A DNA stretch of 64,000 bases from Octopus sinensis. Lineage: Eukaryota. A program made the translations under genes and the position numbers. Positions 4,854 through 62,998 of this stretch are shown here, one piece after another. Positions within the stretch are counted from its first letter, which is position 1, and each line of letters begins with the position of its first letter. Location: positions 18,290,001-18,354,000 of the forward strand of contig NC_043006.1 of the NCBI RefSeq assembly GCF_006345805.1, given 5' to 3'. The notes under the pieces are model-generated. The model was not told the DNA's origin. It did not search any database and was given only the letters and a program-made list of their open reading frames with translations.

Positions 4854-5222
4854 GGCGCAATGACCCAGTGGTTAGGGCAGCGGACTCGCGGTCGGAGGAT
4901 CGCGGTTTCGATTCCCAGACCGGGCGTTGTGTGTGTTTATTGAGCGAAAACAACTAAAGCTCCACGACCTCCGGCACGGGGTGGTGGCGACCCCTGTTGT
5001 ACTCTTTCGCCTCAACTTTCTCTCACTCCACTCTTACTTCCTGTTTCTGTTGTACCTGTATTTCAAGGGGCCGGTCTTGTCAGTCTCTGTGTCACGCTGA
5101 ATATCCCCGAGAACTACGTTAAGGGTGCACGTGTCTGTGGAGTGCTCAGCCACTTACACGTTAATTTCACGAGCAGGATGTTCCGTTGATTCGGATCAAC
5201 CGTAACCGACGGAGTGCTTCCC
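4854..5222 (+). mobile_element. tRNA(Arg)-like SINE, family B (head ggcgcaatggcccagtggttagggcagcggactcgcgg; octopus OR-like)
   Basis: A and B boxes visible; copies at ~23787-24165(+), 31717-32010(+), 35643-35945(+), 36929-37190(+), 37216-37516(-), 43011-43388(-), 49486-49795(+). Confidence 0.8.
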
Positions 5223-6166: not shown

Positions 6167-6705
6167 CCAGGATATCAATCGTCTGGAAGCTGTTCAGCGA
6201 CGTGCAACCAAAAGAATACCCTCCATCAGGCATTTGCCATATTCTAAACGCCTTACTTCCCTGGGCATGGACACATTGAAACTCCGACGTCTGGCAGCTG
6301 ACTTGGCAGACACCCATAAAATTATCAACCATCGTACAAACAATAACTCTGAGCACCTTTTCAAACTCCACCCATCTAACACCCGTGTACATATTTACAA
6401 AGTCAGAAAACAGCACAGCTCCCATGACTTCAGGAAACATTTTTTCACGCTGAGAGTTGCTGAAGCATGGAACAAACTGCCGGCATCAGTTGTTAGTTGT
6501 CGGAGCACTGCATCCTTCAAAACTTCCATGCTTTCTGAGATTCGCCAACACTACTACACCTGATTTTCTCCCCTCCTTACACACACAAGCATGTATCTGA
6601 CTCATACATTGTTCGCTTTCCAGACATTTTTACATTACTGCATGTACTTTATATGCACTTTCTGACAAGTTGTGGTGCACTGTATACAATAATTTCATTA
6701 TTATT
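6167..6705 (+). mobile_element. CR1/L2-group LINE 3' fragment
   Basis: LEAVQRRATK...PYSKRLTSLGMDTLKLRRLAADL...FFTLRVAEAWNKLP, followed by a 3' tail ending in (ATT)n. Confidence 0.85.
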
Positions 6706-7758
6706 ATTTTAAATTACCTCGTATTTATGGATTTACCAATCGGGAAAGTTTTAGTGGTAGAGGATCTCAAGGAACGTAACTCAACATATAAAACGTTAAT
6801 CATATGGCTATGTCCAGATTTTTTTTTTTTCGTCTTTCTTAAAATAATGCAAATGATTTGAATAAAAAATGTAAAATTCTTCCCTGTATTTTAGGTTATA
6901 GCAAACAACATACTGACGACAACAACATACCAGGCGAAACCGAGTATATTATTTAAAATAAGACACCAGATGAGATTCAATCTGCATTGGTGGATGCAAC
7001 ACTACCAGCTGTGCAAGTATCCCACCGACAAGGGACTGATGCAGAATGGGTCGAAACGATCGTTGTACTGAATAAAGATTCTTGCAAACTCCATTTTCCG
7101 TTTCCCTCATTCATTAAAAACTCAACGAACACTGCAAAATTCCTGAGGTAGATCCAGTGACATTTATATCAAAACTGTAGATGACATCAGGTAGCCTAAA
7201 CAGTGAAAGTGCTTTAATCGGCATACTACTAACCATGTAATTACGTATACATACATACATGGTGGCTGCCCCCTCGTTATCGAGTATGGCCATTGCACGA
7301 AGCTTAATCAATGTTGTTATCGTGCAATAAGATTTTTTTTTAAAGTGAGGAAAGGCTGTGCACTGAGTCAATCCCACTCACTAAGCAACAGCAGCCATAA
7401 TCCGAAAAGAAGAACAAGTCAACATCATCGGTAACCACTGAGCCGCGGGTTTTATGTCGGAATTATCCCAGTTACCTGAGTTACCTTCTCCTAGAAGGAT
7501 GCCCTAACAAAGTCTAGGAGTCCTTCACTCCCAATGGTTTAACCGCGCGATCGGGTATTCAGTCCGATTATTTCTACGTCCCCGCGCAAGATACAGCCTT
7601 AAGACATTTATTGGATGGCCATTGACTCTCAAGAGTTCCTCCGCCCTTTGATGGGTTTTGTTTTTCATCCCGCAGGGTGTCCAATAAACACCCTCCTCAC
7701 CAAGCAAGCATACATACATATATTAGAGGAAAATATATAATATATATTTTATATATAT

Positions 7759-7794
<36 letters not shown>

Positions 7795-7927
7795 ATTAAC
7801 AAAAGAATGAAAGAGACCTCGATATTATGTAAATAGAGGAATTTATTTGTAAATGTAGCCATGATAAAACTCCGAGTTTCAGAGTTTTATCATGGCTATC
7901 GAAAAATTGTCCCATATTACATTTACA

Positions 7928-7979
<52 letters not shown>

Positions 7980-8097
7980 CGGGGATGTACTTGCATAGCG
8001 AGTGACTTGATCTGAGATCGTGTGCTGGAACGAAAACAATTGCAGCGTGGAAGAAACACACAAAAACCGTTAGATTCACTTTGACATTTAAATTCAA

Positions 8098-8148
8098 TTT
8101 GTCAAAATATTTTCGTCGCTTTGAGACCGCGAGCTGTTCACTGACAAA
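8098..8148 (-). ncRNA. Hammerhead ribozyme motif, G3:C8 core variant
   Basis: TTTGTCA-GTGAACA-GCTCGC..GCGAC-GAAA-ATATT-T-TGACAAA; 7-bp stem I, palindromic stem III AATATT. Confidence 0.55.
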
Positions 8149-8206
8149 ATTCTGTGCTGCATCTATATATATATATATGTGTGTGTGTGTGGTGTGTGTG
8201 TGTGTG

Positions 8207-8238
<32 letters not shown>

Positions 8239-8327
8239 TATATATATACATATATACATATATATATATATATGTGTGTATATATATATATATATACTAT
8301 ATATATATATATATATATACATACATA

Positions 8328-8389
<62 letters not shown>

Positions 8390-15295: not shown

Positions 15296-15346
<51 letters not shown>

Positions 15347-19791: not shown

Positions 19792-19877
19792 ATGTCTGTG
19801 AATGACTCACCAATAGATGACAAATTCTTTGAGAGCAACATAGAAGAAAACCAATCTGAAGAATCAGATATATTTGA
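19792..19877 (+). CDS. Candidate first coding exon of TTC23-like gene (MSVNDSPIDDKFFESNIEENQSEESDIF + 2 nt)
   Basis: AAAAATG context, open acidic frame, GTGAGT donor at 19878 in phase 2 matching the phase-2 start of the exon at 35137; possible acceptor (catttag) at 19755. No homology support for this low-complexity peptide. Confidence 0.5.
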
Positions 19878-35136: not shown

Positions 35137-35341
35137 TTCTGATAACAACTCAGATCACAGTTATACCACAGAAGTACAAAAGATGGGTTCTATGGATGGT
35201 GAACAAGCATCAAAGAGTGTCCCAATGAACAGCAACTCCCAGCCAGCAACTGTAGACAACAGCAATCCTAAGATGAAGACAACCTCTGACCTTCTAAAGG
35301 AAGCTGAAAGTAATGGAAAAAAATACATTGCTGCTGGAATG
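35137..35341 (+). CDS. TTC23: TTC23/TTC23L-like TPR protein, exon (SDNNSDHSY...DLLKEAESNGKKYIAAGM)
   Basis: ttgcag acceptor, GTATTT donor at 35342, 205 nt ending in phase 0. C-terminal part resembles the vertebrate TTC23 segment I recall as KLHLCEEKAKSYSNSHEY; joins in frame to the next exon. Confidence 0.75.
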
Positions 35342-35511: not shown

Positions 35512-35642
<131 letters not shown>

Positions 35643-36871: not shown

Positions 36872-36912
<41 letters not shown>

Positions 36913-37519: not shown

Positions 37520-37536
37520 CACACACACATATATAT

Positions 37537-37597
<61 letters not shown>

Positions 37598-39010: not shown

Positions 39011-39134
39011 ATAAATGAAGCCATTCATGAATTTATACGGGCTATGACATTGACAAGAGTGATATTCGGTTCCATGCACTGGCAGCTGGCTGCCAGTTAT
39101 GTTTCATTAGCTGAAGCCTACCTTCTAGGAAAAG
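39011..39134 (+). CDS. TTC23: TTC23-like exon (INEAIHEFIRAMTLTRVIFGSMHWQLAASYVSLAEAYLLGK)
   Basis: Polypyrimidine ttttcttccag acceptor, GTATAT donor at 39135 (phase 1). Strongly resembles recalled human TTC23 [39 protein letters not shown]. Confidence 0.9.
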
Positions 39135-43520: not shown

Positions 43521-43680
43521 GTTTCACTGCCCAGGCAGAATACCATTCTGAGAGAGCGAAATCTTTGATGCTTGATTCCAATATCCACATTGCTACTAAT
43601 AATACAGGCAAGTTGTCCATGTACAACATGCTTGTTAATTTACACCACATATTGGCTGTAACAAAATGCTCAGGGAAAAG
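43521..43680 (+). CDS. TTC23: TTC23-like exon (GFTAQAEYHSERAKSLMLDSNIHIATNNTGKLSMYNMLVNLHHILAVTKCSGK)
   Basis: tctag acceptor in the matching phase; resembles recalled TTC23 GLSLQAKQHAEKARQIL; ends at the U12 donor ATATCCTTT (43681). Confidence 0.88.
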
Positions 43681-45015
43681 ATATCCTTTTTAATAGGTAC
43701 CTATTTTTAAAAAACTTTTTGTTTGTATATTGTCAATGTTTCTCGGTGGTGAGCTGGCAGAAACACCAGTTTGCTGAACGAAATGCTTCACGGTATTTTC
43801 GTCTGTCTTTACATTCTGAGTTCAATTTCTGCCAAGGACAAATTTGCCTTTCATCCTTTTGAGGTTGATAAATTAAGTACCAGTTGCATACTGGGGTCAG
43901 TCTAATTGACTGGCCCCTCTCCCAATATTTTGCGTTTTGTGCCTAGAGTAGAAAAGAATATTTCTCTGAACAAAATATTTATTTACACTAGCTTTATAAT
44001 ATACTATATATATTTCTTTACTACCCACAAGGGGCTAAACACAGAGGGGATAAACAAGTACAGACAAACGGATTAAGTCGATTACATCGACTCCAGTGCG
44101 TAACTAGTACTTAATTTATCGACCCCGAAAGGATGAAAAGCAAAGTCGACCTCGGCGGAATTTGAACTCAGAATGTAACAGCAGACGAAATACGGCTACA
44201 CATTTCGCCCGGTGTGCTAACGTTTCTGCCAGCTCGCCGCCTTTATAATAATATACTATATATACAATATATATTAACACATACAAGACCTGTAATGGAA
44301 TGGTCAAGGAAATGAAGTTCACTACCTGACTGGTATGTATTTTTATTTAGCTGGAAAGGATGAAATGCAAGGGCTGAATGTGGCTGCCAGAACAAGGAGT
44401 GAAACACACTGAATCTGCTAATCTATAACATTCTGTAGTAGTATATATTGAAATGAATTAAACATTGGTGAACTATATTGCTGCCATTGTACCCTCTCCC
44501 TCTGTGTCTCTTTCCTTCTCTTTTTTTTTCCTCTCTCTCTGTGTATATGAGTGTATGTGTGTGTTTGTTCATTTGTGTATATATATATATATATATATAA
44601 CTTATAAATAAGGGCAAACAAAAATATTTCTAACGCCAAATATGCCGAAATTGGACATACGCATGCTACTCGAAAAAAAGGTCGACAGAAATTTCTAAAA
44701 AATTCCATTATTACCATATTGGAATGATTTCAGGATTAGTTCATAAGAACCCTCCCTTCGTCAGTGATAAATGTGGTAAAGAAATAAATGAGATACTTAC
44801 TCATACCCATGGAAGAAGCAAAATACTAAGTCATGAGCACAATTAAGTACCCCAAATACATCCAAAATAGAAATACTCCAGCCCATTCAAGACACGTGGG
44901 ATTTGAACTGAGGCTTTCACAGAGTGAGAGAATCCGGAAGTGAACACTATTAAATTTATATTTAATGTAGGATAAATTTTTTTTTCCATATTTTGCTTTC
45001 TCTCATTTTGCATAT

Positions 45016-45048
<33 letters not shown>

Positions 45049-47489
45049 CGTCTTCAAGTATTTCGGTTTTTCTGGGAGTCCCTTTTTAAAGTAGAAGAAA
45101 TAGCTAAGGTTTTTTGGCCGCTATTTCTAAACTTCGGTATGTGGTAAAGCAAATCTTTGCTGAACCCTAATTATAAAGTATTACTTAAGTTTATCATGAA
45201 ACGGTCTTTTTTCATGCCGAATTCTACTTGGTGAAATTATTGATTACTTCTTAATTAATTAATTTTACCCTTTGTTATTATTTATATATATATACATATT
45301 TTGTGTTTCAACTGTTATATTTAATATACCTAATTTGTTTATCTGCATAATTACCTCCATATCTGCTCAACTTGATCCCTCTTATAGCCATTTTTTACTC
45401 TGTGGAATTGAACCCCTGTAAAGACATTGGAGTCTAATTTTGAATCATCTGAGAATTACTGTCTTCTATACTGAGAATCTCTGGGTTTCATCTGTAAACT
45501 ATATGTATGTGTGTGTATGTGTATATATATTGGTACTATTATGATGATGTGATTGAAGTCTGAGCCTGATTGCACCATTTTTCTTTCTGGTTTTACAGTG
45601 TAAGCACAGGCACTCCACTAGCAATGTGCACCAAAGAAGAGCAATGCAAAAGGATCTGAGAGATGGTGATGGTGAACCAGTTCACCATTACCATCTCTCG
45701 AGCTTGCTGAATCTTCTTGTCAGTGGTGGAGGTTGACAGGCATCCTGCTCCCTCCTTGAGTGTCACAATTGTCTGTCCACTTTTTAACTTCTCAATCTAC
45801 TCATAGACACTTCTACACGGTAGTGCACTGACCCCATATTATGCTAAAAGCCTCCTATGAATTTTACCACCTGACATACCTTTCGACCAGAGAAATTGGA
45901 TCACTGCTCTTTGCTCTTCTTTGGTGCACATTGCTTAGACTGTAAAGCCAGAGAGAAAAATGGTGCGATCAGGCTCACACTTCAATCACATGACCACAAT
46001 AGTACCAACTATAAGCACACATGTGCAGAAGACAGTGTGACAATAATAAAGATATGTAAAAAGGCGGCGAGCTGGCAGAAACATTAGCATGACTTCCCCT
46101 CATATATATATATATCAGTGCAGGGATGGGTGTATGTTTAAGTAGTTTGCTATTCAATTGTGTAGTTTTGCATTCGGTCTCACTGTGTATACATTTCGTG
46201 TATATATCATCTTCACCTAAAATGTCTAGTAAGGCCATTATCTATTCTTTTCACCACTTCTTGTGATTTTGCTGGATTCGAACCTGTTAGATGGAGTGTT
46301 GTGTCACTCTACATAGCAGGTGAATATGTTCATTTATTTGACATTTATCAAGTGGACTCTTCCTTTGTCAAGTTTATTGGCTTGTGCCAGATGTATGTAT
46401 AAATTACTCATTTTAAAGAGTATTAATATTTTTCCTCTAATATACTTGTAATTAAGTAAAAGCCAAAGTTCACGGTTCATGGTTAGAACTGACAGTTTAC
46501 CACTTTATTGGCACAAGCATACTTACATACTTAGTTACTTGCATACATACTTATATACATACACATTCACTGTTTACTACAATAATTTGGTTCGCTAGAC
46601 TACTATAAATTTACTTGAAGTTTGATATAGGTAAGGTTGCTCGTTTTGGCTGTCTTCCATCTCCAATCTCCATACAATTCCTATGCTATACAATCCTCTA
46701 TACAATAAAGAAAAATTTAAGTAGTGCTTAAATGCAAACTGCTTATTGAAGTATAACTTTAAAACTATTAAATTATTAGCAAATGCCATCTTTGTGAGTA
46801 TTCAAAAGAAGTGGTCATTTATCTGAGGTGACCAGCTGTACTTTAAGATAAGTTTATGTTTGTTAGTTTTGTTATGGAGACTACTGATTTTTTGATTGCT
46901 GCTAGGCACACCGTATTTTGTTTCTAATCCATAATCATCATCATCATCATCATTTAACGTCCGTTTTCCATGCTAGCATGGGTTGGACGATTTTGACTGA
47001 GGGCTGGCGAACCAGATGGCTTCACCAGGCTCCAATCTTGATCTGGAAGAGTTTCTACAGCTGGATGCCCTTCCTAACGCCAACTACTCCGAGAGTGTAG
47101 TGGGAGCTTTTTACGTGCCACCGGCTCGGGGGCCAGTCAGGTGGTACTGGCAATGACCTTGCTTGAATCATTTTACACGTGCCAGTGAAGCGATGTTGGT
47201 AATGATCACGCTCGAATGGTGCCCTTTTATGTGCCACGGGTATGGAAGCCAGTTGGCTGCTCTGGCAACAATCATGCTCAGATGTTTCTCTTGGCAAGAA
47301 ATACTACAAAATAGTATTAAAGGTTTATAACTCAATACTGTCACCTACTTTGTGTTAGCAATATGTTGTTTTCTTTTTTTGAAGTGTATCTCTACATATA
47401 TTCTGTAGAATTTAGAGCCAACACTGAAAATTATGACATTTTATATATGTGGCTTTGTGGTAAGTAGCTTGATTACAAACCACATGGTT

Positions 47490-48550
47490 CCAGGGGCATC
47501 CTGTCTTGAATTCCTCCGTTATTGCCTGGAGGACTATGATAAATAGGAGGGGACTGAGGACTGAACCTTGGTGGACCCCAACCTCTACCCGGAATTCTTC
47601 ACTGTACTCGTTGCCAACCCTCACCTTACTAGCAGCGTCACTGTACATGGCTCGCACAGCTCTCACTAACCATTCATCTATCCCTAGTTTCCTCATTGAC
47701 CACCAGATAAGGGATCAGGGGACCCTGTCGAAGGCTTTCTCCATATCAACAAAATCCAGGTGCAGGGGCTTGTCTTTGGCTAGGTATTTCTCCTGCAGCT
47801 GTCTTACCAGGAATATAGCATCAGTAGTACTTTTCCCTGGCACGAACCCAAACTGCATCTCATCTAAGCTAACTCTCTCTCTAATTAATTGGGCTATAAC
47901 CCTCTCCATGACCTTCATTACCTGATCCAGCAGCTTGATACCCCTGTAGTTATTTGTATCTAGAGCGTCACCTTTACCTTTGTAGCAGTTGACTATTATG
48001 CTGCTTCACCAGTCATTGGGTATGACTCCTTTGTGTATCACCTGGTTAACTATATGGGTGACTAGGCTATAGCCAACACTGCCAGATATTTTGAGCATCT
48101 CTGCAGTGATTCCTGATGGGCCGGGGGCTTTCCCTGTTTTCATGCTTGTAATTGCCTTAACTACTAAGGAACTGTCAACTCGGATTGCTGGTCCCTCTGT
48201 TGGGTTGACATTTGGCAGACTCTCTTTATCCCATTCATTTTCCTCATTCAGCAACCTTTCATAGTGGCATCTCCAAACCTCTCTCTTTGCATCCTCATTT
48301 AGCGCAAGTGAGCCGTCATGCTTGCGAACACATTTCTCTCCTACCACGTCACGATTCTCTCTCACACACTGTCTTGCAATACGAAATTCCTCAAGTCTTT
48401 CATCCTCATGGCGCAGAACATTGGCAAATTTTTTCTTATCTGCTTCCCCTCTGGCTAAATACACCTGCCTCCTAGCTTCCCTTCAGGCAGTCTGATACAC
48501 TTCCCTGTACCACCGTTCTTCCAGTCCTTCCAAGCCTGTTTCTTTTGTCT
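47490..48550 (-). mobile_element. RTE-clade LINE reverse transcriptase fragment
   Basis: QFGFVPGKSTTDAIFLVRQLQEKY..DMEKAFDRVP; GVHQGSVLSPLLFIIV; in-frame stops. Confidence 0.9.
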
Positions 48551-48599
48551 AGTGGAGAATAAACTGTCATCTACATTATGCAAAAATGAAAGTAACACT

Positions 48600-49434
48600 G
48601 ACATCTCATTTTAACAGATATATTTACCAAAATTACATAAAAATATCTTGAAATACTAAAGTATAAATTTATTCAATAAAATCACCATCAGCTTCAATCA
48701 CAACCTCCAGATAACTTCAGAATTTCCTGCAACTCTTCTGGATGGTCTTCTTGTTTCAGTTGCTGAATGCTGTTATAATCCTTGCCTTCAGTTCATCTTT
48801 GGTGTTACAAGGAGTTTTGCTGGCCTCTTGCTCAACTTTGTCCCACATATAATAATCAAGGGGGTTGCAGTCTGGGGAGTTAGGTGGCCAGATGTTAGTG
48901 ATGATGTGGTCGCAGAAATTGTCTGACAGTCATGACTGGGTTCTCCTGCTTGTGTGGCATGATGCAGAGTCCTGTTGCCAGACATAGGGTCTTCCAGAAG
49001 CCACCTTCTTGACCCAGGGCTGCACTACCTACTACAGACACTTGATGTAGGCCTCAGTGTTGTGTGTGAGGCTATGTGGGAAGATGAACAGAGGCATAAT
49101 GTTGCCATCTCTAGTGATCACTCCAAACACCATGATGTTGACTGGATGTTTGATTTTTATCATTCTCGGTACATGTCCTCAGATTGCACTGTTCTCAGAC
49201 TGACACCCAAATACTCCAAAATGTTCATATTGGAGCTTCCGGTATGAGTGCCAAACAGTACAGAATGTCATTTTCAAATTTCTGGTAGAGAGAATTGCAT
49301 CGTGGTGCTGTTTTTCTTACAGATGATGCCCAACTGACCCTACTATACTGTGTAGTTGACAAAGTCAAAAACAAACAATGTGCATGCGCAAAATAAAAAT
49401 TATAAAATGGCAACAATTTACCCATCACATCCTG

Positions 49435-49436
<2 letters not shown>
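48600..49436 (-). mobile_element. Tc1/mariner (maT-like) transposon remnant
   Basis: WPPNSPDCNPLDYYMWDKVE...NTKDELKARI...VIEADGDFIE on the minus strand; TACAG.. terminus at 49436. Confidence 0.7.
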
Positions 49437-49470
<34 letters not shown>

Positions 49471-50998
49471 ATATGTGTGTGTGTGGAGGTGCAATGTCCC
49501 AGTGGTTAGGGCAGCGGACTCGCGGTTGTAGGATCGCCGTTTCGACTCCCAGACCAGGCATTGTGAGTGTTTATTGAGTGAAAACACCTAAAGCTCCACA
49601 AGGCTCCAGCAGAGGGTGGTGGCAATCCCTGCTGTACTCTTTCGCCACAACTTTCTCTCACTCTTTCTTCTGTTGGCCTTCTCACTTAGCCAGTGGGGTG
49701 GCGTCATTTGAAGGCTAAAACAATGCGAAGCGCATTGTGACCAGCGATATGTAGCAACATCTGATAGCCTGGTCGCTCATGGTGATCACGGTGATATATA
49801 TATATATAAGAATTTGTGTGTGTGTGCTTATGTTCCTTATGCATTCCAAAACCGAGTGCCCATTTTTGATGTATGGGTATCAAAAAATTCAGTAAGCTTT
49901 TGGCTACTAACTAAACTATGTTTTCATTCACTTATTTGCATTTACAAAAATTTAAGATTATCATTTTTCTTTTAGTCATCTATTGTAAATGACATCTTTT
50001 ATCACCACCACCACCACGATGACATCACATTTTCTATATGTGTTCGTGCATTTGTTACGTATCTTAGGCCGATGACTGATAAGTATATGTGTGTGATGGT
50101 GTTTACATCTGTCAGTATACATGCATTTTTGTGACAACTGACACACACACACATCTAAAGACAGGCAGATACAGAAAAGGACAGAGATAGGCTTGAGGTG
50201 GGTATTAACCCTTTAGCATTTAAACCGGCCATATCCGGCCAAAAGTATTCTGCCTGTTTTATGTTCAAACTGGCCAGATCTGGTCTCTCACACCAACCCT
50301 ACAATATCGTTTTAAAAATTAACAGCTACCTCATCAAAATCTCATAGCTACAAGATAATGCTGGATTAGTTCAAAACAATGTGGATAAAAAAAGCATTAA
50401 TTTTGGTAGAATAATACAAACACTAAAGGGTTAATGTATGTCTGTGTGTGTGTGTCTTAGACTATGTACGTGACTTCCACCCACACTGACCTACCCAACA
50501 GTGAAACATGCTGATATGGAAAGTTGCAATGACTAGACTTCATTTGAAAGTGAAAATAGTTTCATACTTTCGACTTCAACCAAAATTACAGTGTTCGATT
50601 ACCAGACTGATGATGTATGAATAATGAAAGTAATGTTTCTCCGAATTAGTCACCTCTGTATTTTAATAAAGAAAGTTGTTTAGGTGATCTTTCATTTTGA
50701 CTTGCAGAGCTGTCATCTGCGTTCGTTAATTTCTGTAAAAAATATTTTTGTTTATTTAATTTTGTTTTAAAGTCAAAGAGAGGAGAAAGTGCATGATGTA
50801 TATATGTTTATATGAAATGGATATGTGTGTGAGAGAGAGAGAGAGAGAGAGTAACTGAAGGGGTGTATTGTCATGTATACATACATACATACATCAGTAC
50901 ATATGCATACAACTTTTTTGTATGTACATGTGCGTGTGTGTGTGAGAAAGTGAGAGAATGAGTGAACATGTGTGATCTCATGTATGCGTAAGTGGCAC

Positions 50999-51047
<49 letters not shown>

Positions 51048-52399
51048 CACACGTCCATTTCATATACATGTTCATACATTTTTCACTTTCTCCTCTCTTT
51101 AACATTAAAGCAAAAGTAAATGAATAAAAATTTTTTACTGATATTAACAAGAAAAACAGCTGACCCGGATTACAATTCATTTACAACTTCCAGAGTTATA
51201 ATGAAACATAGCTGCTGCAGATTATCTGTCTGCCAAATAAACTATGTTTTTCACTCAACAACTCTTTTTTATAACTAAAATAACCTTGGCAACTATGTTG
51301 GGTTGCACAATTTTGAAGTCATTTTTGGAGATTATTTCAATTTGCTTCTAATGTTTCACTTTCAATGTTTCATGCACACATAGAATTCTACTTAGACAAA
51401 CATTTATGAAAATGTACACATAAATATTGTATAAATATTGTATTAAAATGGGCCACAACCCAAAAAATTGTACTAAATGACATCCATTTCTCTATATGTT
51501 ATGAGGAAATGTGTGAAGGCACATGGCTCAGTGGTTAGAGTGTCAAGCTTATGATTGTGAGGCTGTGAGTTCGAATCCCAGACCGGGCTGCATGTTGTGT
51601 TCTTGAGCAAGATACTTTATTTCACATTGCTTCAGTTCACTCAGCTGTAGAAATGAGTTGCGACGTCACATGTGCCATGCTGTATTGGCCTTTATCTTTC
51701 CCTTGGATAACACTGGTGGCGTGGATAAGGGAGGCTGGTATGCATGGGCGACTGCTGGTCTTCCATAAACATTATTGCCTGGACTTGTGCCAGGAGGGTA
51801 TCTTTCTAGGTGCAATCCCATGGTCAGTCTTGACTGAAGGGGGTCTCAGCATGAGGAAATACAGTCACTCACTATCTCTCTCTCTCTCTCTCTCTCATGC
51901 ATAAAAATGATGAATGCATATGTATTTATGGGCGAAGGTAAAGAATATGCACACCTGGTGTTTAGGGTTTAGGGTTATGCTGAAAGTGGGTGGTGTATGT
52001 ATTCTTTACCTCCACCTATTTATGTACGTGTGTATGAAAGATAATGTGTGTGTGTGTGAAAGAGAGAGAGAGAGAGAGCAAGTGAGTAACACACCTACAT
52101 GCAAAAAAATTCATTCATCTCAACATACTCTTCACTCGTTCACTCTCTCTCACACACGTCCATTTCATATACACATACATCTTTCACTTTCTCCTCTCAC
52201 TTCAAAGCAAATGCCACTTCAAAGCATAAAGAAATTAATGAACAATTATATGATCCCATATCTGCTGAGTTGATAACTTTGCTTCTTCAAATGAAAGAAT
52301 GCAATAAAATAACTTCCTTTGACACACACACACATGCACACACATACACACACACACACACACTCTAGGTAAAACTTCTGTGTGAATTATGTTATTTCT

Positions 52400-53030
52400 T
52401 GCACTGTGCACGAGCAAATTCAAAGCCGAAATCCAATTGAAATGATGTTTTGATCACCATAATATTGACGTAATCGAATAGCCTCCATTCTTGTTGGACA
52501 ATTGTTTACAAATGTCAATGGCTGTCTGCATTTGGTTGCTTTCCGAAAGTCAGTGGATTTGATGGTCCAAATGCACCGTCGTTTTTCTTGGGGCACCAGA
52601 CTTTGCCGATCTTTATATTCGTCAGTCTCCGAGTATAACTTCCACGCTTGCATGCAAGCCATTTTACTGCACTTTAGTTGCTTGTTGATGTTCGAAAAGG
52701 AAACTTTTTGCTGGTGAAGTAATATGATTTTTGCTTTCGTGACTGGACTGAGGCTACATTTTTTTTTCCCATTTTTCTATTGTGTAATTTCTGTTTTTGA
52801 TAAGCGTATTTAAAAACCTGATTTTCGATATAGTTTTCCCACAAATCCTGTCCTTTATCTCTTCTTTCTGACATGTTCAAGGTGACATTTCCACTCCCTC
52901 ACCTTATTTTTTTCCTAGATTTCTTCCGATTCTTATGTTTGCGATACAGGACATTAGGATTTCACCCACAAAACAAACACATTCTCAATATTTTAATTTT
53001 CTCCCTCTCCACACCAAATTTTTTTTTTTA
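52400..53030 (-). mobile_element. Tc1-like transposase N-terminal remnant
   Basis: KAKIILLHQQKVSFSNINKQLKCSKMACMQAWKLYSETDEYKDR resembles the Tc1 paired-like HTH. Confidence 0.5.
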
Positions 53031-55058
53031 CTTTTTTCAAATTTTTATTCTTAGTAATCCATGGAGGAAAAACAGAATTTTACCCATCACCTCACCGCTT
53101 TCAAAAAGCTACTCACTTCCAATGTGTCACTTTTAGCTTTTTGGAAAGCGGGGAAATTTCTTCAGAAATAATGCTGTTTGCCTGTTGTTTCTAGCATGTT
53201 GAGTTTTCTGGTGGTGGTCTGGTATTTTTAAGTTTGCCATTTCAGTAGAATTCTACGCATGCAGGAAACATCAGACTAAAGTGAAAGCAAGTAGGTGATG
53301 GGTGGGCAAGGTGGGGGAAGAGGCACTGAGTGTTTCTTTAAGAAAAATTAAACTATAAAAAATACATATATTTCCCAGATTCATAATATTTGTATTTTTC
53401 TATGTAGAAAAAAACAAAACAAAACAAAACAAAGATCAAAAAGTTACTAATTAAGAAATTACAGTGAGGATGGGGGAAAATTAAAATTTTAAAAACATGA
53501 TTTCTGGACAAATCGTATTAACCCCCAATACATACTTTGTGATCCTTCTTAAGAACAGAAAGCACTTTCATGCAAACCCATGCAAAATGTACCCTCCCAT
53601 CTTTCACTTTTAAGCAAGCAATAACTTCCATTATGCCATTAACTGTATATCAGTGGTGCCGCTTCTGCCCATAAGAAAGGAGCAAACAATACAATGTACC
53701 TGTAGGTCATAACATCCGGGCAACACCAGGATGCATTGCTAGTGTGTGTGTCTGTATATATATAGACACACACACACACCATAATGTCCTTCCACATTTT
53801 TATACACCCAAACACAAACACATGTATAAAACTCATGCATCCATCCATACACACACATACATTATGTTCGTGTATGCATGTTTCTGTAGGTGATGTATGT
53901 AAAACGTATGGAGAAAACTGAGAAGCTGAGAAGCTTCTGGATTAAATTATCAATTGTGGTATTTGTTCCCTTCCTAATACTTGGTCGTTTTTATTGTTAG
54001 AAATGCAGGGACTCATAGATTGACCTGTTAGAAACCCTGTAATTGTGTAAATTCTTGTTCACCAAATACACAATAAAATTAACATTGAAAGGACATTAAA
54101 TTTGAGATAACTTTGTTATACTGGGAAAGAGGTTGTTACAAACAAGGTGACGTTTACAGATTTGCCTTTCAGGTTTTCAAAACGAATAAAGCTATAGACA
54201 ATAAATAATGGGCAATTTTGACGTAACTTCTGTAAATGGTTGGAACATAGAGATGATTATATGACTAGCTTAAATATAAATGTTATAAAATGGGACTACA
54301 AGATGAAATGAATAAAATGATTTCAGATGGAATTTAGGTAGTATTGTTAAGTATAGTTATTTGACGGAAACTTAATACTAAAATAATGTGTTTGTACAGT
54401 ATTTTGTTGGGTCTACTGGAAAATTTATTACAAAATTTGGATATAATTTATTCAAATGAGAATTTAATTGTTTTATTAAATGTCTATTATGAGTATTTAT
54501 GCAATTTGATGATCTGATTTCATGACAAATTTCGAGAAAGGTATTCTTCATTCAGAAAATGTGAATGAATGAATACATACATGGTGGCTGCTCCCTCGTT
54601 ATCAAGTATGGCCATTGCACGAAGCTTAATCAATGCTGTTATCATGCAATGCCTGTGCAAGAAGATTTTTTTTAAAGTCAGGAAAGGTTGTGCACTGAGT
54701 CAATCCCACTCACTAAGCAACCGCAGCCATAATCCGAAAAGAAGAACAAGTCAACATCATCGGTAACCACTGAGCCGCAGGTTTTATGTCGGAGTTATCC
54801 CAGTTACCTGAGTTACCTTCTCCTAGAAGGATGCCCTAACAAAGGCTAGGAGTCCTTCACTCCCAATGGTTTAACATACATACATACAGACAGACAGACA
54901 TACATACATAGAAAACACGAATATACACAATGTGTGTATGTGTGTGTGTGCATATACTCTGGGGTCTCTACCCTCATGTACACACCAACATATGAAAGAA
55001 TATCCTCTTATACATACATTCACAGAAACTTTTTTTTACATATGTGTGTATGTGTGTA

Positions 55059-55102
<44 letters not shown>

Positions 55103-57999
55103 TATATATAAATATATAAATATATATGAATATATATAAATATATATAAATATATATAAATATATAAATCGGAATCGAAATTGAACCAATCCTATGACTG
55201 GCACCCGGCAGATGCCAAGACCCCTGGACTGGAGATACGTAAAAAGCACTATCCGAATCATGGCCAATGCCAGCGCTGTCTCGACTGGCTTCCGTGTTGG
55301 TGGCACATAAAAAGCACCATCCGAATCGTGGCCGAAGCCAGTGCCGCCTCGACTGGCTTCCGTGCAGGTGGCACGTAAAATGCACCAATCCGACCGTAGC
55401 TGATGCCAGCCTCGCCTAGCACCAGTGCAGGTGGCACGTAAAAAGCACCTACTACACTCACGGAGTGATTGGCGTTGAGAAGGGCATCCAGCTGTAGAAA
55501 CATTGCCAGATAAGACTGGAGCCTGGTGCAGCCTTCTGGCTTCCCAGATCCCCGGTCGAACTGTCCAACCCATGCTAGCATGGAGAACGGACGTTAAACG
55601 ATGATGATGATGATGATGATGATATATATACATAAAATAGAAATATTATTATTTCTAAATCTCTCAAAGCAAAGGCTATTTGCCAAGATAATGTGGCTGT
55701 CCCGAAAGAGATGATGTTGCTATCGTTTTAGCAACAAGAAACATCGTTTCCAGCTGGCTATATGACACAGTGTCTGTGTCCTTATACTTTTGAACAGGGA
55801 GCTCAGCATTCCCATCAAGTACATAACAACATCTGTGGATTAGTTTCTGGGTTATTGCTCTTTATCAACACAGAGCAGATGCTTTGGTGAAATGATGTTG
55901 CTGAATTCACTGTTCAAATATGGACGATGTTACTGTTGTTTTAGCCCCCAAAAACATCAGTTCTAGCTGGCTATACGACACACTATCTGTGTCCTTATAC
56001 TTTCGAACAGGGTGCTCAGCATTCCCATCAAGTGCAAAACAATATCTGCGGACTAATTTCTGGGTTATTGCTCTTTATCAACACAGAGTAGCTACTTCGG
56101 CTTGATGGCATTGCTGATTTCACCTTTTGAATACTGTAAAATCCCATGTAATTAGTGCACCTGTGTAATTTACACAGGTGATTTTCTGGATAAAAATTGT
56201 TAAAAAAAGCTTCTACTCATGTAAATGTTGCACCCAAAAGTTTTCAGAATTACCAATGTAGCCAGGGGGTAAAGGTTTTATTTAGTTGTATTTAGCATAA
56301 TTTCACTTATTTAATTTTCATTAAATAAAAATAATTTCTGTTTATGAGGTATCACATTGAAAGCTATCAAATTATGAAGTGTTTGTGTTGTTTATAATAT
56401 ACTTTATTTTACATTTCTTGCCTGCCAGAGATTGTTGTCCGATCTTTAGCATACTTCTGAATGTCTTCTCAAATCACGATCACAGGAAAAGTCGTTGATA
56501 ATTCTTATCAACAAAGACAAAGCTGATAAGTATGCACAAATGTTGCAAAATAAGTTTAATTACCAATAAACATCAGCTTGGATGACACTTTACTCAACCA
56601 ACAGAGGAAGGTGACCAATCAAACTGATTATGTAAACAGAATTCTGATTGATTGAAAGTGTCTTCTTGTCTCAAGCTCTGATTTTCCACCTATTCTTGAG
56701 AGAACCTTTGATACAGAGTATCAAAATTTAAACTCTTTCACACTTATAAAATGTCAAGCAAACTTTAAAATTAGTCATTACTGTTTTAGCTGGGGGACCA
56801 AACTGATTGTTTGGTAACCTGCTAAAATAAACATTCAGTATCGAAAAGGTAAAATAAACAGCTTTGCAAGTTTAACTCAGTGTTTACTGAATAAGAGGTG
56901 CGAAATTTAAGAAGCAGCTTGCTAGAATATACACGTCTGTGAGGAGACATAAACAAGAATACCAAAACTCTACCATACCAAAAAAACTGGTAATACGTAC
57001 ATTACAAGTGTTCTATCAAGAGAACATAAAATTGCTGCATAATTTAATATGAATGTGAAATGATATTAAACATCGCATAAGGTAAATGAAGGTTTCTGCA
57101 GGAACTCTAAGTCATATTCACTGAATGAGTTTACATGTGCAAGGCTGAATTATGATGTTGCCAGCGGCATTACAAGTGGTAAAATATGGCCCAGATCGTG
57201 ATTGCCAGCATGAACGTCAAACTTCAAGAAGTAGTTAACCATGTAATGGTTTTAGTAAATACTAGCAGTATCGCCCGGCGTTGCTCGGGTTGGTACGGGA
57301 AATAACTATATAAGCATTTTTAGAGAGTTATAGCTAAAAAATAGCAAAAAAAGGATTAAAAATGGAAAAAAAATGATAGTAAGTTTTTTTTAAATCGTTG
57401 ACTCATCGTAGACATTTTTAGAGAGTTACTTCCCTTATATAATAGCGAAAAAAATGCATTAAAATGGAAAAAAATGATGGTAAATTTTTTTTTAAATCGT
57501 ACTCATCGTAGACGTGCGCTAATACCCAGAAGGGCTCGATATGAATCACGACTATAAGATACCCGGTTTTGGTTAAACTGCACCGTAAAATGTGGGAGTA
57601 GTTAGGAATCTAAATCGTAGGAGACAGACAAACAACTTGACTTTTATATATAAAGATATACAGAAAAAGTAATCATTATACCGTCCAGCATAAATAAAAG
57701 TCAACTTCATTATATTTTTTCTGTAAAAAACCTATTCTGACATTAAATGAGTCAACTTCCGGCGGTATGAATATTTACATTTGTACATCATTTCTCAAAA
57801 AAAAAATTTCAAAAAAATTCTGGAAATGATTTTCTCATGTAAGTTACGCACCCATGAAAGTTTATTTTTGTTTTTGCAAAAGAAAGTGCGTAAATTACAT
57901 AGGTTTTTATTGTATATACATTTCCAAGTGGCACGCAACCACTGATCAAAGAAATAGAAATATTATTTCTAAATCTCTCAAAGAGAGACATTCAATAAG

Positions 58000-58410
58000 A
58001 GAGATGACTGCGCTGGTATGGGCATGCAGCGAGAATGGATGAGGATAGCTGTGTGTAAAAGTGCCACACCCTAGTGGTTGAGGGAACCTGTGGAAGAGGT
58101 AGACCCAGGAAGACCTGGGATGGGTGGTGAAGCACAACCTTCAAACATTAGGCCTTACTGAGGCAATGACTAGTGACCAAGACTTTTGCAAATATGTTGT
58201 GCTTGAGAAGACCCTGCAAGCCAAGTGAGACCATAACCTCGTGGCCTATGCTAGGGGTGTAACCAGCCCACTTATGCATACCTTTCTTTCATTGGATACT
58301 AAACTCTGCTTGCGAAGACCTCTTGAGGCAAGTGAAATTGAAATCGAAATCAAATTCGATGACTGGCATTCATACTAATGGAGCGCTAAGAGCAGCATCT
58401 GGCAACGTGA
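58000..58410 (+). mobile_element. RTE LINE 3' fragment
   Basis: RMDEDSCV*KCHTLVVEGTCGRGRPRKTW, then the 3'-UTR motif gaagacctcttgaggcaagtgaaa. Confidence 0.75.
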
Positions 58411-59039
58411 TCCTTGTGTTAAATTATCCTTGTATTAATCTTATGTAAAGATGAGTTCCACATGTGCATCCAGCCCTGGAATATACCCTGCTGTTGGATA
58501 TCATGTGGTAGTCAAATAATGACATAAGAACTCTTATACATACATTACAAGGTTTTCATCCAGATCATGCTAAATATATATATCAGGCATGGCTGTGTGG
58601 TAAGAAGCTTCTTCCCAACCACATGGTTCTGGGTTCAGTCCCACTGCATGGCACCTCTGGCAAGTGTCTTCTACTATAGCCTCGGGCTAACTAAAGCTGT
58701 GTGGATTTGATACGCAGAAACTGAAAGAAGTCCGTTGTATATATATGTGTGTATATATCCATGTGCGTGTGCCTTTGTGTCTGTATTTCTCCTTCCGTCA
58801 CCCCTTGATAACGGGTGTTGATGTCTTTCCACCCCTGTAACTTATCAGTTTGGTACAAAGTGTCCAATAGAATAAGTGCCAGGCTTTCAAAATACAAGTC
58901 CTGGGGTCGATTTCTTTGGCTAAAACCCTTTGGCTAAAACCCTTTACTCCAGCATGGCTGCTGTCAAATGACTGAAACAAGTAAAAGTATATGTATGTAT
59001 ATGTATGTGTGTGTGTGTGTGTGTGCATGCATGTGTATT

Positions 59040-59073
<34 letters not shown>

Positions 59074-61235
59074 CATATATATATGTATATATATAATAGT
59101 AATAGGGAATGTTATTCCAAAACTTACAGGGAAAATTTCAATTTAACAATTTTAGATAAAACGTTCACAATATATATATGTATATAATTTAGAGAAAAAA
59201 ACCACTATTAAACAATTCAATTCACACCATATAGAAAACATATACTATAAAAAAAAAACCTTATTTTAAAAATCAATAAAGTACAATAAATAGTAAATAG
59301 TAGTAAAAAGACTACGCACGTTTCATGGCTATATTTCCTAATAGATAATAATAATAAAATCAATTCAACTACTATTTACTATTTATTGTACTTTATTGAT
59401 TTTTAAAATAAGTTTTTTTTATAGTATATGTTTTCTATATGGCGTGAATAATATCTTTCTTTATTGAATTTTTAATAGTGATTTTTCTCTAAATTATATA
59501 CACACACATATATATATATATATATCATCATCATCATCGTTTAACGTCCGTTTTCCACGCTAGCACAGGTTGGATGGTTCGACTGGGGTCTGGGAAGCCA
59601 GGGGCTGCACCAGGCTCCAGTCTGATCTGGCAGTGTTTCTACAGCTGGATGCCCTTCCTAATGCCAACCACTCCGCGAGTGTAGTGGGTGCTTTTTACGT
59701 GCCACCTGCACAGGTGCCAGGGGAGGCTGGCATCGGCCACGATCGGTTGGTGCTTTTAACGTGCCGCCGGCACGGAAGCCACCCAAGGTGGCGCTGGCAT
59801 TGGCCACATTCGGATGGTGCTTTTTATGTGCCACCGGCACAGAAGCCAGCCAAGGCGGTGCTGGCATCGGCCACGTTCGGATGGTGCTTTTTATGTGCCA
59901 CCGGCACAGAAGCCAATCGAGGCGGCGCTGGCAACGGCCACGTTCGGATGGTGCTTTTTATGTGCCATCGGCATAGGTATCACAACTACTATTTCCATTA
60001 TATATATATATATATAAAGAGAGAGCACATGTACACACTTACATATGAAGGAGCACGTATAAATACATTCATATATGTGACTATCTATAATGTACACACA
60101 AGCATATACCCACATGTAAATGCCAACACATGAAAGAACGCTCTTATATATTTACAAATATCTTACACATACATCCTTATTTTTATCTATATTCCTTTAT
60201 CCATCTGTCTATAAACCCTAACTATCCACCCTCCCTGAACAAACGCTTATATACATCAGTGCTCACTCTGTCACACTGACTGGCTGTTTCATCTCCCTGA
60301 TTCTTCTACTACTGTGATATCAATCTATGTTTTATGGAACCAATAAACAGCATATACCACACTAGCAGTATCACCCAGCGTTGCTTGGGTTTGTAAGGGA
60401 AATAACTATATAAGCATTTTTAGAGAGTTATAGCCAAAAAATAGCAAAAAAATGCATTAAAAATGGAAAAAAAATGATGGTAAATTTTTTTTAAAATCGT
60501 TGACTCATCGTAGACATTTTTAGAGAGTTACTTCCCTTATATAATAGCGAAAAAATGCATTAAAATGGAAAAAAATGATGGTAAATTTTTTTTAAAATCG
60601 TTGACTCATCGTAGACATTTTTAGAGAGTTACTTCCCTTATATAATAGCGAAAAAATGCATTAAAATGGAAAAAAATGATGGTAAATTTTTTTTAAAATC
60701 GTTGACTCATCGTAGACATTTTTAGAGAGTTACTTCCCTTATATAATAGCGAAAAAATGCATTAAAATGGAAAAAAATGATGGTAATTTTTTTTTAAAAT
60801 CGTTGACTCATCGTAGACATTTTTAGAGAGTTACTTCCCTTATATAATAGCGAAAAAATGCATTAAAAGGAAAAAAAATGATGGTAAATTTTTTTTTAAA
60901 TCGTAGACCCATCGTAGACGTGCGCTAATACCCAGAAGGGCTCGATATGAATCACGACTATAAGATACCCGGTTTTGGTTAAACTGCACCGCAAAATGTG
61001 GGAGTAGTTAGGAATCTAAATCGTAGGAGACAGACACACAACTTCACTTTTATATATAAAGATTTGTCCTGGTCCATCGAACACCTGCCTTCCTCCTGTC
61101 ACCACCGTTTCATCCATTCTTGCCATGTTTTATATCTTACAGACAATCTGGATCTCTCTGTAGTCCATGTTCCCCTCAATGTATAAAAGTTGAGCATTAG
61201 CAGTCTGAGATGCTCTGCAAAGATCACAGGCTCTG

Positions 61236-62400
61236 CCCTCCCCCTCCTCCTCCTCCCCTATTCTTCCTTTTTCCTCCTCCTCCTCCTCCTCCTCCACTTC
61301 TTCTTCCTTCTTCCTCCTCCTCCTCCTCCTCCTCCTCCACTTCTTCCTTCTTCCTCCTCCTCCTCCTCCACTTCTTCCTTCTTCCTCCTCCTCCTCCACT
61401 TCCTCCTCCTCCTCCTCCTCTTCCTCCTCCTCCTCCTCCTCCACTTCTTCTTCCTTCTCCTCCTCCTCCTCCACTTCTTCTTCCTTCTTCCTCCTCCTCC
61501 TCCACTTCTTCTTCTTCTTCCTCTCCTCCTCCTCCACTTCCTCCCCCTCCTCCTCCTCCTCCTCCTCTTCTCCTCCTCCTCCTCCTCCACTTCTTCCTTC
61601 TTCCTCCTCCTCCTCCACTTCTTCCTTCCTCCTCCTCCTCCACTTCTTCTTCCTTCTTCCTCCTCCTCCTCCACTTCTTCTTCCTTCTTCCTCCTCCTCC
61701 TCCACTTCTTCTTCCTTCTTCCTCCTCCTCCTCCCCTTCCTCCCCCTCCCCCTCCTCCTCCTCCTCCTCCTCCTCCTCCTCCTCCACTTCTTCCTTCTTC
61801 CTCCTCCTCCTCCACTTCTTCCATCTTCCTCCTCCTTCTTCCTCCTCCTCCACTTCTTCCATCTTCCTCCTTCTCCTCTACTTCTTCCTTCTTCCTCCTC
61901 CTCCTCCTTCTCCTCCTCTTCCACTTCTTCTTTCTTCCTCCCTTCCACTTCTTCTTTCTTCCTCCCTTCCTCTTCTTCTTTCTTCCTCCCCTTCCTCTTC
62001 TTCTTTCTTCCTCCCCTTCCCCTTCTTCTTCTTTTTTCCTCCCCTTCCTCTTCTTCTTTCTTCCTCCTATTTTCTCTTCTTTTTCTTTCTTCCTCCCCTT
62101 CCTGTTCTTCTTCTTCTTTCTTCCTCCTATTCCTCTTCTTTTTCTTTCTTCCTCCCCTTCCTTTTCTTCTTCTTCTTTCTTCCTCCCCTTCCTCTTCTTC
62201 TTTCTTCCTCCCCTTCCTCTTCTTCTTTCTTCCTCCCCTTCCTTTTCTTCTTCTTTCTTCCTCCCCTTCCTCTTCTTCTTCTTTCTTCCTTCCCTTCCTC
62301 TTCTTCTTCTTCTTCCTTCTTCCTCTTCCCCTCTCCTCTTCCTCCCCCTCCTCTTCCCCTTCACCACCACCACCCTCCCCATCCCCCCCCCCCCTTCATC
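61236..62400 (+). repeat. ~1.15-kb (CCT/CTT)n polypyrimidine low-complexity tract
   Basis: Almost entirely C/T on the + strand; source of the spurious 200-414 aa ORFs. Confidence 0.95.
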
Positions 62401-62872
62401 ATCATCATCATCATAATTTCATGCCCACTTTCCATGTTGACATGGGTTGGATAAGTTGTCATGGTCTGTCATGCTCTTATTTGGAGTTCCTCTATGTGTT
62501 ATATGTATAAATATGTGAGTTTGTGTGTGTGTGTGTGTGGGGTGTGTGCGTATGTGTGTTGTGTGTGTATGTGTGTTGTGTGCGTATGTGTGTTGTGTGT
62601 GTGTGTGTGTGTTGTGTGTGCGTGCGTTTTGCGTGTGTGTGTAATTACATTTAGTTAATTTTTGTAATGGAGTTTCTTTTAATTAGCTGAAGTTGAAGAG
62701 TTTTATTGACTTTTGACATTCTAGTAGCCCATTGAATGATCGGTTTTATCCTTCTTTTACCTTGCATCCACAAATATTTTACAGAAATACATGCAATGAA
62801 ATAAATTATGTGTATTTATTATTGAACATCTGCTCTTTTTGGATTTATTCCTTAACTAATTGTCTGTTCCAC

Positions 62873-62998
62873 ATATGAGGAAAGTGAGAAAAACCTTCTG
62901 AAAGCAGAATGTTTTCTCGAAAATTTGAAGAAATTACCGTCTTCAGATTCAAAGCTTGTTCAGATGTGGGCCATTAAACTGACTCTTGATTTTGCACA
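62873..62998 (+). CDS. TTC23: TTC23-like exon (RYEESEKNLLKAECFLENLKKLPSSDSKLVQMWAIKLTLDFAQ); gene continues beyond the window
   Basis: Preceded by TTCCTTAAC branch site and AC acceptor; open frame in the phase left by the previous exon; GTAAGT donor at 62999. Resembles recalled TTC23 KFKEAAENLTKAERLSKEL...IRLSFAQ. Confidence 0.88.

What the first reader, a model, noticed from the sequence alone, without database searches (positions are those of the whole stretch)
43681..62872. 19.2-kb AT-AC minor-spliceosome intron in the TTC23-like gene
Seen: the exon ends ...GGAAAAG|ATATCCTTTT, and 19 kb later TTCCTTAAC is followed by 14 nt and then ...TCCAC|ATATGAGG. Joining gives ...CSGK-R-YEESEKNLLKAE..., which aligns with the recalled TTC23 sequence. 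Established: ATATCCTT plus TCCTTAAC plus AC defines U12-type introns, and GT-AG-only gene predictors mis-model them. Inference: this is a very long, TE-filled minor intron, likely missing or mis-annotated in automated models. My recollection that vertebrate TTC23 carries a minor intron at the equivalent position is unverified.
Basis: partly seen in the sequence, partly recalled or inferred. Interest (0 to 1): 0.8.

Follow-up and report, generated by a model that had tools for sequence, protein, structure and literature searches.

The report
Conserved AT-AC minor intron, octopus TTC23
The 19.2-kb gap between two exons of the octopus TTC23 gene is a genuine minor-spliceosome (U12-type, AT-AC) intron. 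It sits at a position shared from octopus to mammals, but it is ordinary and the public RefSeq protein model already splices it correctly.

Summary
Exon 4 ends at 43680 (…GGGAAAAG) and is followed by ATATCCTTT. TTCCTTAAC lies at 62848-62856, then 14 nt, then AC at 62871-62872, and exon 5 starts at 62873.

The spliced peptide is 136/136 identical to RefSeq XP_029641422.2 (Octopus sinensis TTC23-like). Only the AT-AC register gives recognised intron ends. No in-frame GT/GC-AG pair searched within about 80 nt of either junction reproduces the protein, and reading past 43680 meets a TAA after three further codons.

An intron lies in the same alignment column and phase 2 in six other taxa:
- **AT-AC U12-type:** Argonauta, the hemichordate Glandiceps, sturgeon TTC23L.
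- **GT-AG U12-type:** amphioxus, Tasmanian devil TTC23.
- **U2-type:** Priapulus.

Two bivalves have no intron there. Human TTC23 is a published "model" minor-intron gene.

Its inference that automated models miss this intron does not hold for this species. It does hold for a GenBank model of Argonauta.

Verdict: real, already known in kind and already annotated. Interest is low.

The parts
19792..19877 (+). TTC23-like coding exon 1 (start codon ATG at 19792; MSVNDSPIDDKFFESNIEENQSEESDIF)
   Evidence: Exact mapping of XP_029641422.2 (P0148) onto the window, followed by a GTGAGT donor
35137..35341 (+). Coding exon 2
   Evidence: Exact mapping of P0148 with GT-AG flanks
39011..39134 (+). Coding exon 3 (INEAIHEF…LLGK, ends in phase 1)
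   Evidence: flanked by ttccag| and |gtatat
43521..43680 (+). Coding exon 4 (G-FTAQAEYH…VTKCSGK, ends in phase 2 with AG of an Arg codon)
43681..62872 (+). U12-type AT-AC intron, 19,192 nt
   Evidence: This is the only register with recognised termini that reproduces the RefSeq protein. A U12-type intron occupies the same alignment column and phase in five other taxa, and a U2-type intron in Priapulus
43681..43689 (+). U12-type 5' splice site ATATCCTTT
   Evidence: the only + strand ATATCCTT in the window
43691..43693 (+). In-frame TAA met if the exon is read on into the intron (…GK-R-Y-P-F-stop).
62848..62856 (+). U12 branch-point sequence TTCCTTAAC. The second A (62855) is 17 nt from the last intron base
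62871..62872 (+). 3' terminal AC. There is no polypyrimidine tract between the branch site and the 3' end
62873..62998 (+). Coding exon 5 (A of the Arg codon, then YEESEKNLL…TLDFA), followed by a GTAAGT donor at 62999
47412..48464 (-). Degraded retroelement ORF fragments inside the intron (reverse-transcriptase motif)
   Evidence: Pfam RVT_1 E=2e-5, which is below the gathering score
61237..62362 (+). About 1.1 kb of (CCT/CTT)n microsatellite in the intron, roughly 500 nt upstream of the 3' splice site

Best explanation
Window positions 43681-62872 are the fourth coding intron of the Octopus sinensis (or its close sister O. vulgaris) orthologue of TTC23. It is a U12-type intron of the AT-AC subtype.

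By established knowledge of the minor spliceosome, the expected mechanism is as follows. U11 and then U6atac pair with ATATCCTTT at 43681. U12 pairs with TTCCTTAAC at 62848-62856. The intron is cut after AC at 62872, joining AG|A into an Arg codon (…CSGK-R-YEESEK…).

The intron is ancient. It occupies the same codon position and phase in octopods, a hemichordate, amphioxus, a sturgeon TTC23L paralogue and a marsupial TTC23. Its lineage-specific fates are those already described for minor introns: an AT-AC to GT-AG subtype switch, conversion to U2-type in Priapulus, and precise loss in bivalves. Its 19-kb length reflects repeat insertions typical of octopus introns.

Shown here: the sequence signals, the reading frame, the identity to RefSeq proteins, and the positional conservation. 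Inferred: actual splicing by the minor spliceosome in octopus tissue.
For: - The sequence signals are exact and each is unique in the window.
- The spliced peptide is 136/136 identical to XP_029641422.2 (O. sinensis). It is 127/136 identical and ungapped against XP_014777218.1 (O. bimaculoides), E=1.3e-74.
- Of the five registers compatible with the protein, only ATATCC…AC has recognised termini.
- All 21 in-frame, stop-free GT/GC-AG pairs found in the ranges searched (donors 43600-43759, acceptors 62800-62959) delete conserved residues, 10 at best.
- Read-through hits TAA at 43691.
- Orthologous introns fall in the same alignment column, phase 2:
  - Argonauta: ATATCCTTTT / TTCCTTGAC / AC
  - Glandiceps: ATATCCTTTA / TTCCATGAC / AC
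  - Branchiostoma: GTATCCTTCT / TTCCTTAAC / AG
  - Acipenser TTC23L: ATATCCTTTT / TCCCTTGAC / AC
  - Sarcophilus TTC23: GTATCCTTTT / ATCCTTAAC / AG
- Human TTC23 is used as a model minor intron, retained on RNPC3 knock-down. The published primers encode ARQILA(N) and SKELLQC, which flank this position (both peptides located in a gibbon TTC23).
- O. sinensis is a species with catalogued minor introns.
Against: - No transcript or RNA-seq evidence from this species could be examined here. The RefSeq protein is itself a computed model.
- The distance from the branch A to the 3' end (17 nt) is at the long end of the range seen in the orthologues (9-14 nt). From my own knowledge it is still within the functional range for U12 introns.
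- Pfam gave no hit on the 94-residue two-exon peptide, so gene identity rests on full-length relatives.
Confidence: 0.93

Rival explanations
1. The two exons are joined by the major (U2) spliceosome through a nearby cryptic GT/GC donor and AG acceptor, and the ATATCCTT / TCCTTAAC motifs are coincidental.
For: GT and GC dinucleotides and AG dinucleotides exist near both junctions. Twenty-one combinations keep the frame open.
Against: - Every such pair removes conserved residues (10 at best) that are present in both Octopus RefSeq proteins and aligned in all orthologues.
- All viable donors lie inside the conserved exon. No donor downstream of 43680 can work because of the TAA at 43691.
- The acceptors lack pyrimidine tracts.
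- The same two U12 motifs recur at the same position in five other taxa.
Confidence: 0.02
2. The 19 kb is not always one intron. Some isoforms include alternative or poison exons, or a nested transcription unit lies within 43681-62872.
For: The intron is long and repeat-rich, with many ORF-like stretches. O. bimaculoides has a second isoform (P0149, 435 aa).
Against: - The main RefSeq proteins of two Octopus species align across the junction without any insertion.
- The shorter O. bimaculoides isoform is identical to the long one across this junction. By my reading of the two printed sequences it lacks a 27-residue stretch near the C-terminus.
- The intron's ORFs gave only a sub-threshold reverse-transcriptase hit.
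- There were no Rfam or tRNA hits.
Confidence: 0.08
3. The locus is a decaying or non-expressed gene copy, so the splice signals are relics.
For: None specific. No expression data could be examined here.
Against: - All five in-window exons are intact and identical to the RefSeq protein.
- Both U12 signals are perfect consensus.
- O. sinensis and O. bimaculoides differ at 9 of 136 residues in this region, with no frame disruption.
Confidence: 0.01

Closest known systems
Minor (U12-type) intron of human and mammalian TTC23
   Same: Same gene family, same alignment column and phase 2. It has a /RTATCCTTT 5' splice site and a TCCTTAAC branch site (Sarcophilus TTC23). Human TTC23 is used as a model minor intron.
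   Different: The marsupial intron is the GT-AG subtype and only 183 nt. The octopus one is AT-AC and 19,192 nt. The subtype of the human intron was not read here.
Archetypal AT-AC U12 introns (for example NOP2/P120 intron F), as defined by the consensus ATATCCTT…TCCTTAAC…AC (my own knowledge; general description in PMC10639083)
   Same: Perfect 5' splice site and branch-site consensus, AC terminus, a short branch-to-3' distance, and no polypyrimidine tract.
   Different: Nothing in kind. The intron is just much longer, and its branch-to-3' distance is 17 nt.
Catalogued minor introns of Octopus sinensis (intronIC survey, Larue and Roy 2023, PMC10639083)
   Same: Same species and same class of intron. 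That survey scored RefSeq annotations, and the RefSeq protein already contains this junction.
   Different: I could not open the catalogue itself, so the presence of this individual intron in it is inferred, not seen.

Membership tests
U12-type (minor spliceosome) intron, AT-AC subtype | 5' splice site matching /ATATCCTT immediately after the exon | tested here: met
   ATATCCTTT at 43681-43689; the only + strand copy in the window
U12-type (minor spliceosome) intron, AT-AC subtype | Branch-point sequence TCCTTRAC a short distance (roughly 8-20 nt) upstream of the 3' splice site | tested here: met
   TTCCTTAAC at 62848-62856. The branch A is 17 nt from the intron's last base. It is the only copy in the window
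U12-type (minor spliceosome) intron, AT-AC subtype | AC 3' terminus and no polypyrimidine tract between branch site and 3' end | tested here: met
   …taattgtctgttccAC|atatgagg
U12-type (minor spliceosome) intron, AT-AC subtype | Removal restores the conserved reading frame of the host gene | tested here: met
   136/136 identity to XP_029641422.2 and an ungapped match to O. bimaculoides TTC23
U12-type (minor spliceosome) intron, AT-AC subtype | Positional conservation with U12-type introns in orthologues | tested here: met
   Same column and phase in Argonauta, Glandiceps, Branchiostoma, Acipenser TTC23L and Sarcophilus TTC23
U12-type (minor spliceosome) intron, AT-AC subtype | The host genome encodes the minor snRNAs (U11, U12, U4atac, U6atac) | not testable with these tools
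   No Rfam hit in this window, which is expected for 64 kb. The literature lists O. sinensis among the species compared for minor-intron conservation
U12-type (minor spliceosome) intron, AT-AC subtype | Experimental dependence on the minor spliceosome, or observed spliced junction reads | not testable with these tools
   No RNA-seq access. No transcript-derived octopus protein was found in the protein collection
TTC23 (tetratricopeptide repeat protein 23) orthologue | Significant full-length-type similarity to proteins named TTC23 across animals | tested here: met
   147 hits at E<=1e-3. The top named hits are TTC23 or TTC23-like from Octopus, Argonauta, oyster, hemichordates, amphioxus and vertebrates
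TTC23 (tetratricopeptide repeat protein 23) orthologue | TPR-type domain detectable by a profile | tested here: inconclusive
   No Pfam hit on the 94-residue fragment. Full-length relatives carry only weak or faint TPR_12 / TPR_NPHP3 hits

The most novel reading that the evidence does not exclude
The bilaterian ancestor of TTC23 carried two AT-AC U12 introns one exon apart: this one, and a second after …PVYxxxGK|LEQSKG. Octopods kept both as very long introns. Under this reading, slow minor splicing of the pair acts as a regulated bottleneck on the dosage of this protein. The 1.1-kb CU-rich tract 0.5 kb upstream of the 3' splice site might serve as a binding platform for a pyrimidine-tract-binding protein. 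The 'two ancestral U12 introns' part is well supported. The regulatory part is pure speculation.
Probability: 0.07. Interest if true: 0.4.

Novelty: already known. Interest (0 to 1): 0.15.

Why it matters
It matters little beyond correct annotation. The intron is a clean example of an ancient minor intron, with AT-AC retention, GT-AG subtype switch, U2 conversion and loss all visible in one gene. It also gives a concrete check for gene predictors: two GenBank mollusc models (Argonauta, Solemya) mis-read U12 introns of this gene by running into ATATCCTTT. It opens no new question. RefSeq already splices this junction correctly, and minor introns of this species have been surveyed.

Tried and rejected
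- **Word-indexed protein search, two-exon peptide:** no hits. This was an index limitation, because the exhaustive HMMER search found a relative 93% identical.
- **Pfam on the 94-residue peptide:** nothing.
- **Human TTC23 sequence recalled from memory:** used only as a lead to locate exon 3. All conclusions were then re-based on database proteins.
- **O. bimaculoides genomic locus:** could not be fetched because the gene range is 182.6 kb.
- **Orangutan and lamprey isoforms:** not on record.
- **Hydractinia TTC23-like:** intronless, so uninformative about the ancestral state.
- **Second word-indexed search with O. bimaculoides TTC23:** only 3 proteins and no octopus transcript-derived sequence, so there is no direct transcript evidence.
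- **Rfam and tRNA scans of the window:** empty.
- **Literature search for U12-type introns in cephalopods:** no papers.
rejected, because an in-frame TAA at 43691 precedes it.
Full report
**1. The observation**

- The exon ends …cagggaaaag at 43680 and atatcctttt begins at 43681.
- ttccttaac is at 62848-62856. It is followed by 14 nt, then ac at 62871-62872, then atatgagg from 62873.
- The upstream exon starts after an AG at 43521. The downstream exon ends before GTAAGT at 62999.
- Joining 43521-43680 to 62873-62998 gives one open frame, …LAVTKCSGK-R-YEESEKNLLKAECFLENLKK….

ATATCCTT occurs once on the + strand of the whole window, and TCCTTAAC once on either strand. Each motif on its own is about as frequent as chance allows. 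What is not chance is that the single copies sit exactly at the two frame-compatible ends of homology. I estimate the joint probability at about 1e-8 from those counts.

**2. Which gene and which organism**

An exhaustive HMMER search with the three-exon peptide (39011-39134 + 43521-43680 + 62873-62998) found 147 relatives.
- The best hit, P0001, is XP_014777218.1, TTC23 of Octopus bimaculoides. It is 93% identical and ungapped over all 136 residues.
- Its 90% cluster also holds XP_029641422.2, 'TTC23-like' of Octopus sinensis.
- That O. sinensis protein is 136/136 identical to the window peptide. Its first 234 residues map exactly onto five window exons: 19792-19877, 35137-35341, 39011-39134, 43521-43680 and 62873-62998.

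The window is therefore O. sinensis or its very close relative O. vulgaris, and the finding is coding intron 4 of the gene. The other three in-window introns are ordinary GT-AG introns.

**3. Is the AT-AC junction the only possible one?**

The letters ATAT occur both at the intron start and at the start of exon 5, so five registers reproduce the protein. Only 43681..62872 has recognised termini, ATATCC…AC.

I listed every GT/GC donor in 43600-43759 paired with every AG acceptor in 62800-62959 that keeps the frame open.
- There are 21 such pairs, and all of them delete conserved residues, 10 at best.
- All donors lie inside the conserved exon.
- Reading on from 43680 gives R-Y-P-F and then TAA at 43691-43693.

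The RefSeq proteins of two Octopus species show no insertion at the junction. There is therefore no constitutive exon inside the 19 kb.

**4. Comparative test**

Genomic loci of orthologues were fetched. Each protein was mapped exactly onto its locus, and the junction was placed on a MAFFT alignment. An intron lies in the same alignment column, splitting the same codon in phase 2, in all of the following.

| Taxon | 5' splice site | Branch site | Branch A to intron end (nt) | 3' end | Length (nt) |
|---|---|---|---|---|---|
| Octopus (window) | ATATCCTTTT | TTCCTTAAC | 17 | AC | 19,192 |
| Argonauta hians | ATATCCTTTT | TTCCTTGAC | 14 | AC | 4,336 |
| Glandiceps talaboti (hemichordate) | ATATCCTTTA | TTCCATGAC | 14 | AC | 2,089 |
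| Branchiostoma floridae | GTATCCTTCT | TTCCTTAAC | 12 | AG | 564 |
| Acipenser ruthenus TTC23L | ATATCCTTTT | TCCCTTGAC | 9 | AC | 308 |
| Sarcophilus harrisii TTC23 | GTATCCTTTT | ATCCTTAAC | 10 | AG | 183 |

Other taxa show different fates.
- Priapulus caudatus has a U2-type GTAAGC…CAG intron at the identical position and phase. This is a minor-to-major conversion.
- The bivalves Magallana gigas and Solemya velum have one continuous exon there, which is a loss.
- The Hydractinia gene is intronless.

For human, PMC12332006 lists TTC23 among 'well-characterised model minor introns' that are retained on RNPC3 knock-down. Its RT-PCR primers translate to ARQILA(N) and SKELLQC. These lie in the exons on either side of this position (peptides located in a gibbon TTC23; alignment).

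**5. Mechanism**

Shown here: consensus U12 signals, a restored frame, and positional conservation across bilaterians.

Inferred from established knowledge of the minor spliceosome: U11 and U6atac recognise ATATCCTTT, U12 recognises TTCCTTAAC, and cleavage follows AC.

The pattern is AT-AC in a protostome, a hemichordate and a fish paralogue, GT-AG U12 in amphioxus and a marsupial, and U2-type in a priapulid. This fits the long-standing model of subtype switching followed by class conversion, and of loss by deletion. PMC10639083 discusses these as the general fates of minor introns.

**6. Intron content**

- At least 37% of the intron has another copy in the window or is tandem or simple repeat.
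- It holds a reverse-transcriptase fragment on the minus strand (47412-48464; RVT_1 E=2e-5, below the Pfam threshold).
- It holds several tandem arrays and a 1.1-kb (CCT/CTT)n tract at 61237-62362.
- There were no Rfam family or tRNA hits.
- The length is unremarkable for this genus. The O. bimaculoides gene spans 182.6 kb.

**7. What is not supported**

The inference that automated models miss or mis-annotate the intron fails for this species. The RefSeq models of O. sinensis and O. bimaculoides contain exactly this junction. O. sinensis was also among the species compared in a published minor-intron survey built on such annotations.

The general warning is still valid elsewhere. The GenBank model of Argonauta hians (GAB1603543.1) reads into the intron (…KYPFTHS, where YPF is TAT CCT TTT, the TATCCTTT of the splice site). 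It then uses GT at L001 4039 and an AG at 8374, losing YSDSEE.

**8. Verdict**

This is a real, textbook AT-AC U12 intron. It is ancient, and the public protein model already splices it correctly. It is already known in kind and in this instance, so interest is low. No RNA evidence could be examined, and that is the only remaining gap.

Noticed in passing
L001 9429..10326; L002 5205..5573; L003 17281..19467; L005 6022..6882 (beyond the 3' end of the window in Octopus): TTC23 orthologues carry a second U12-type intron one exon downstream (phase 0, after …PVYxxxGK | LEQSKG…). It is AT-AC in Argonauta, oyster and Glandiceps and GT-AG U12 in amphioxus. It is absent from Tasmanian devil TTC23 and sturgeon TTC23L. 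The oyster lost the first U12 intron but kept this one. Octopus probably has it just past position 64000.
   Followed up: partly
L001 4020..8355 (true intron) versus 4039..8374 (deposited model): The GenBank protein GAB1603543.1 of Argonauta hians mis-models the homologous AT-AC intron. It reads …KYPFTHS into ATATCCTTT and uses a false GT…AG pair, replacing the conserved YSDSEE. The model is also only 314 aa, so it is probably truncated at the 3' end.
   Followed up: yes
L006 7043 (ATATCCTTT) to about 8175: The Solemya velum model KAL5020176.1 has a 14-residue insertion, ISFLEWAIFEFSQI, that is a read-through of the second U12 intron (ATA TCC TTT = ISF). The true 3' end, downstream of GCCTTAAC, was not resolved. 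It may be a non-AC terminus.
   Followed up: partly
L004 11600..12099: Priapulus has a U2-type GTAAGC…CAG intron at the same codon position. Its 3' end reads …ATTTCCACATCAG. This contains the TTCCAC that ends the AT-AC introns of Octopus and Glandiceps, so it may be a relic of the former AC terminus.
   Followed up: no
window 61237-62362: A 1.1-kb imperfect (CCT/CTT)n microsatellite, pyrimidine-rich on the transcribed strand, lies about 500 nt upstream of the minor intron's 3' splice site. It produces the long poly-E, poly-P and poly-L pseudo-ORFs in the ORF list.
   Followed up: no
window 60415-60919; also 57315-57513 and about 14894-15301: A 101-nt unit is tandemly repeated five times at 95% identity. 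There is a two-copy array 3 kb upstream and a related copy outside the intron. It looks like a satellite-like or element-internal repeat family.
   Followed up: no
window 49435-49833 versus 35589-35985, 36872-37212, 37201-37567; also 59524-59963 versus 42166-42607: Interspersed repeats of about 400 nt (77-89% identical copies, both orientations) are shared between this intron and the neighbouring TTC23 introns. They are SINE-like elements typical of octopus genomes, including the 'tcatttgactgcagccatgctggag' element at about 39270.
   Followed up: no
L008 501-1856: The TTC23-like gene of the cnidarian Hydractinia symbiolongicarpus is a single uninterrupted ORF with no introns at all.
   Followed up: no
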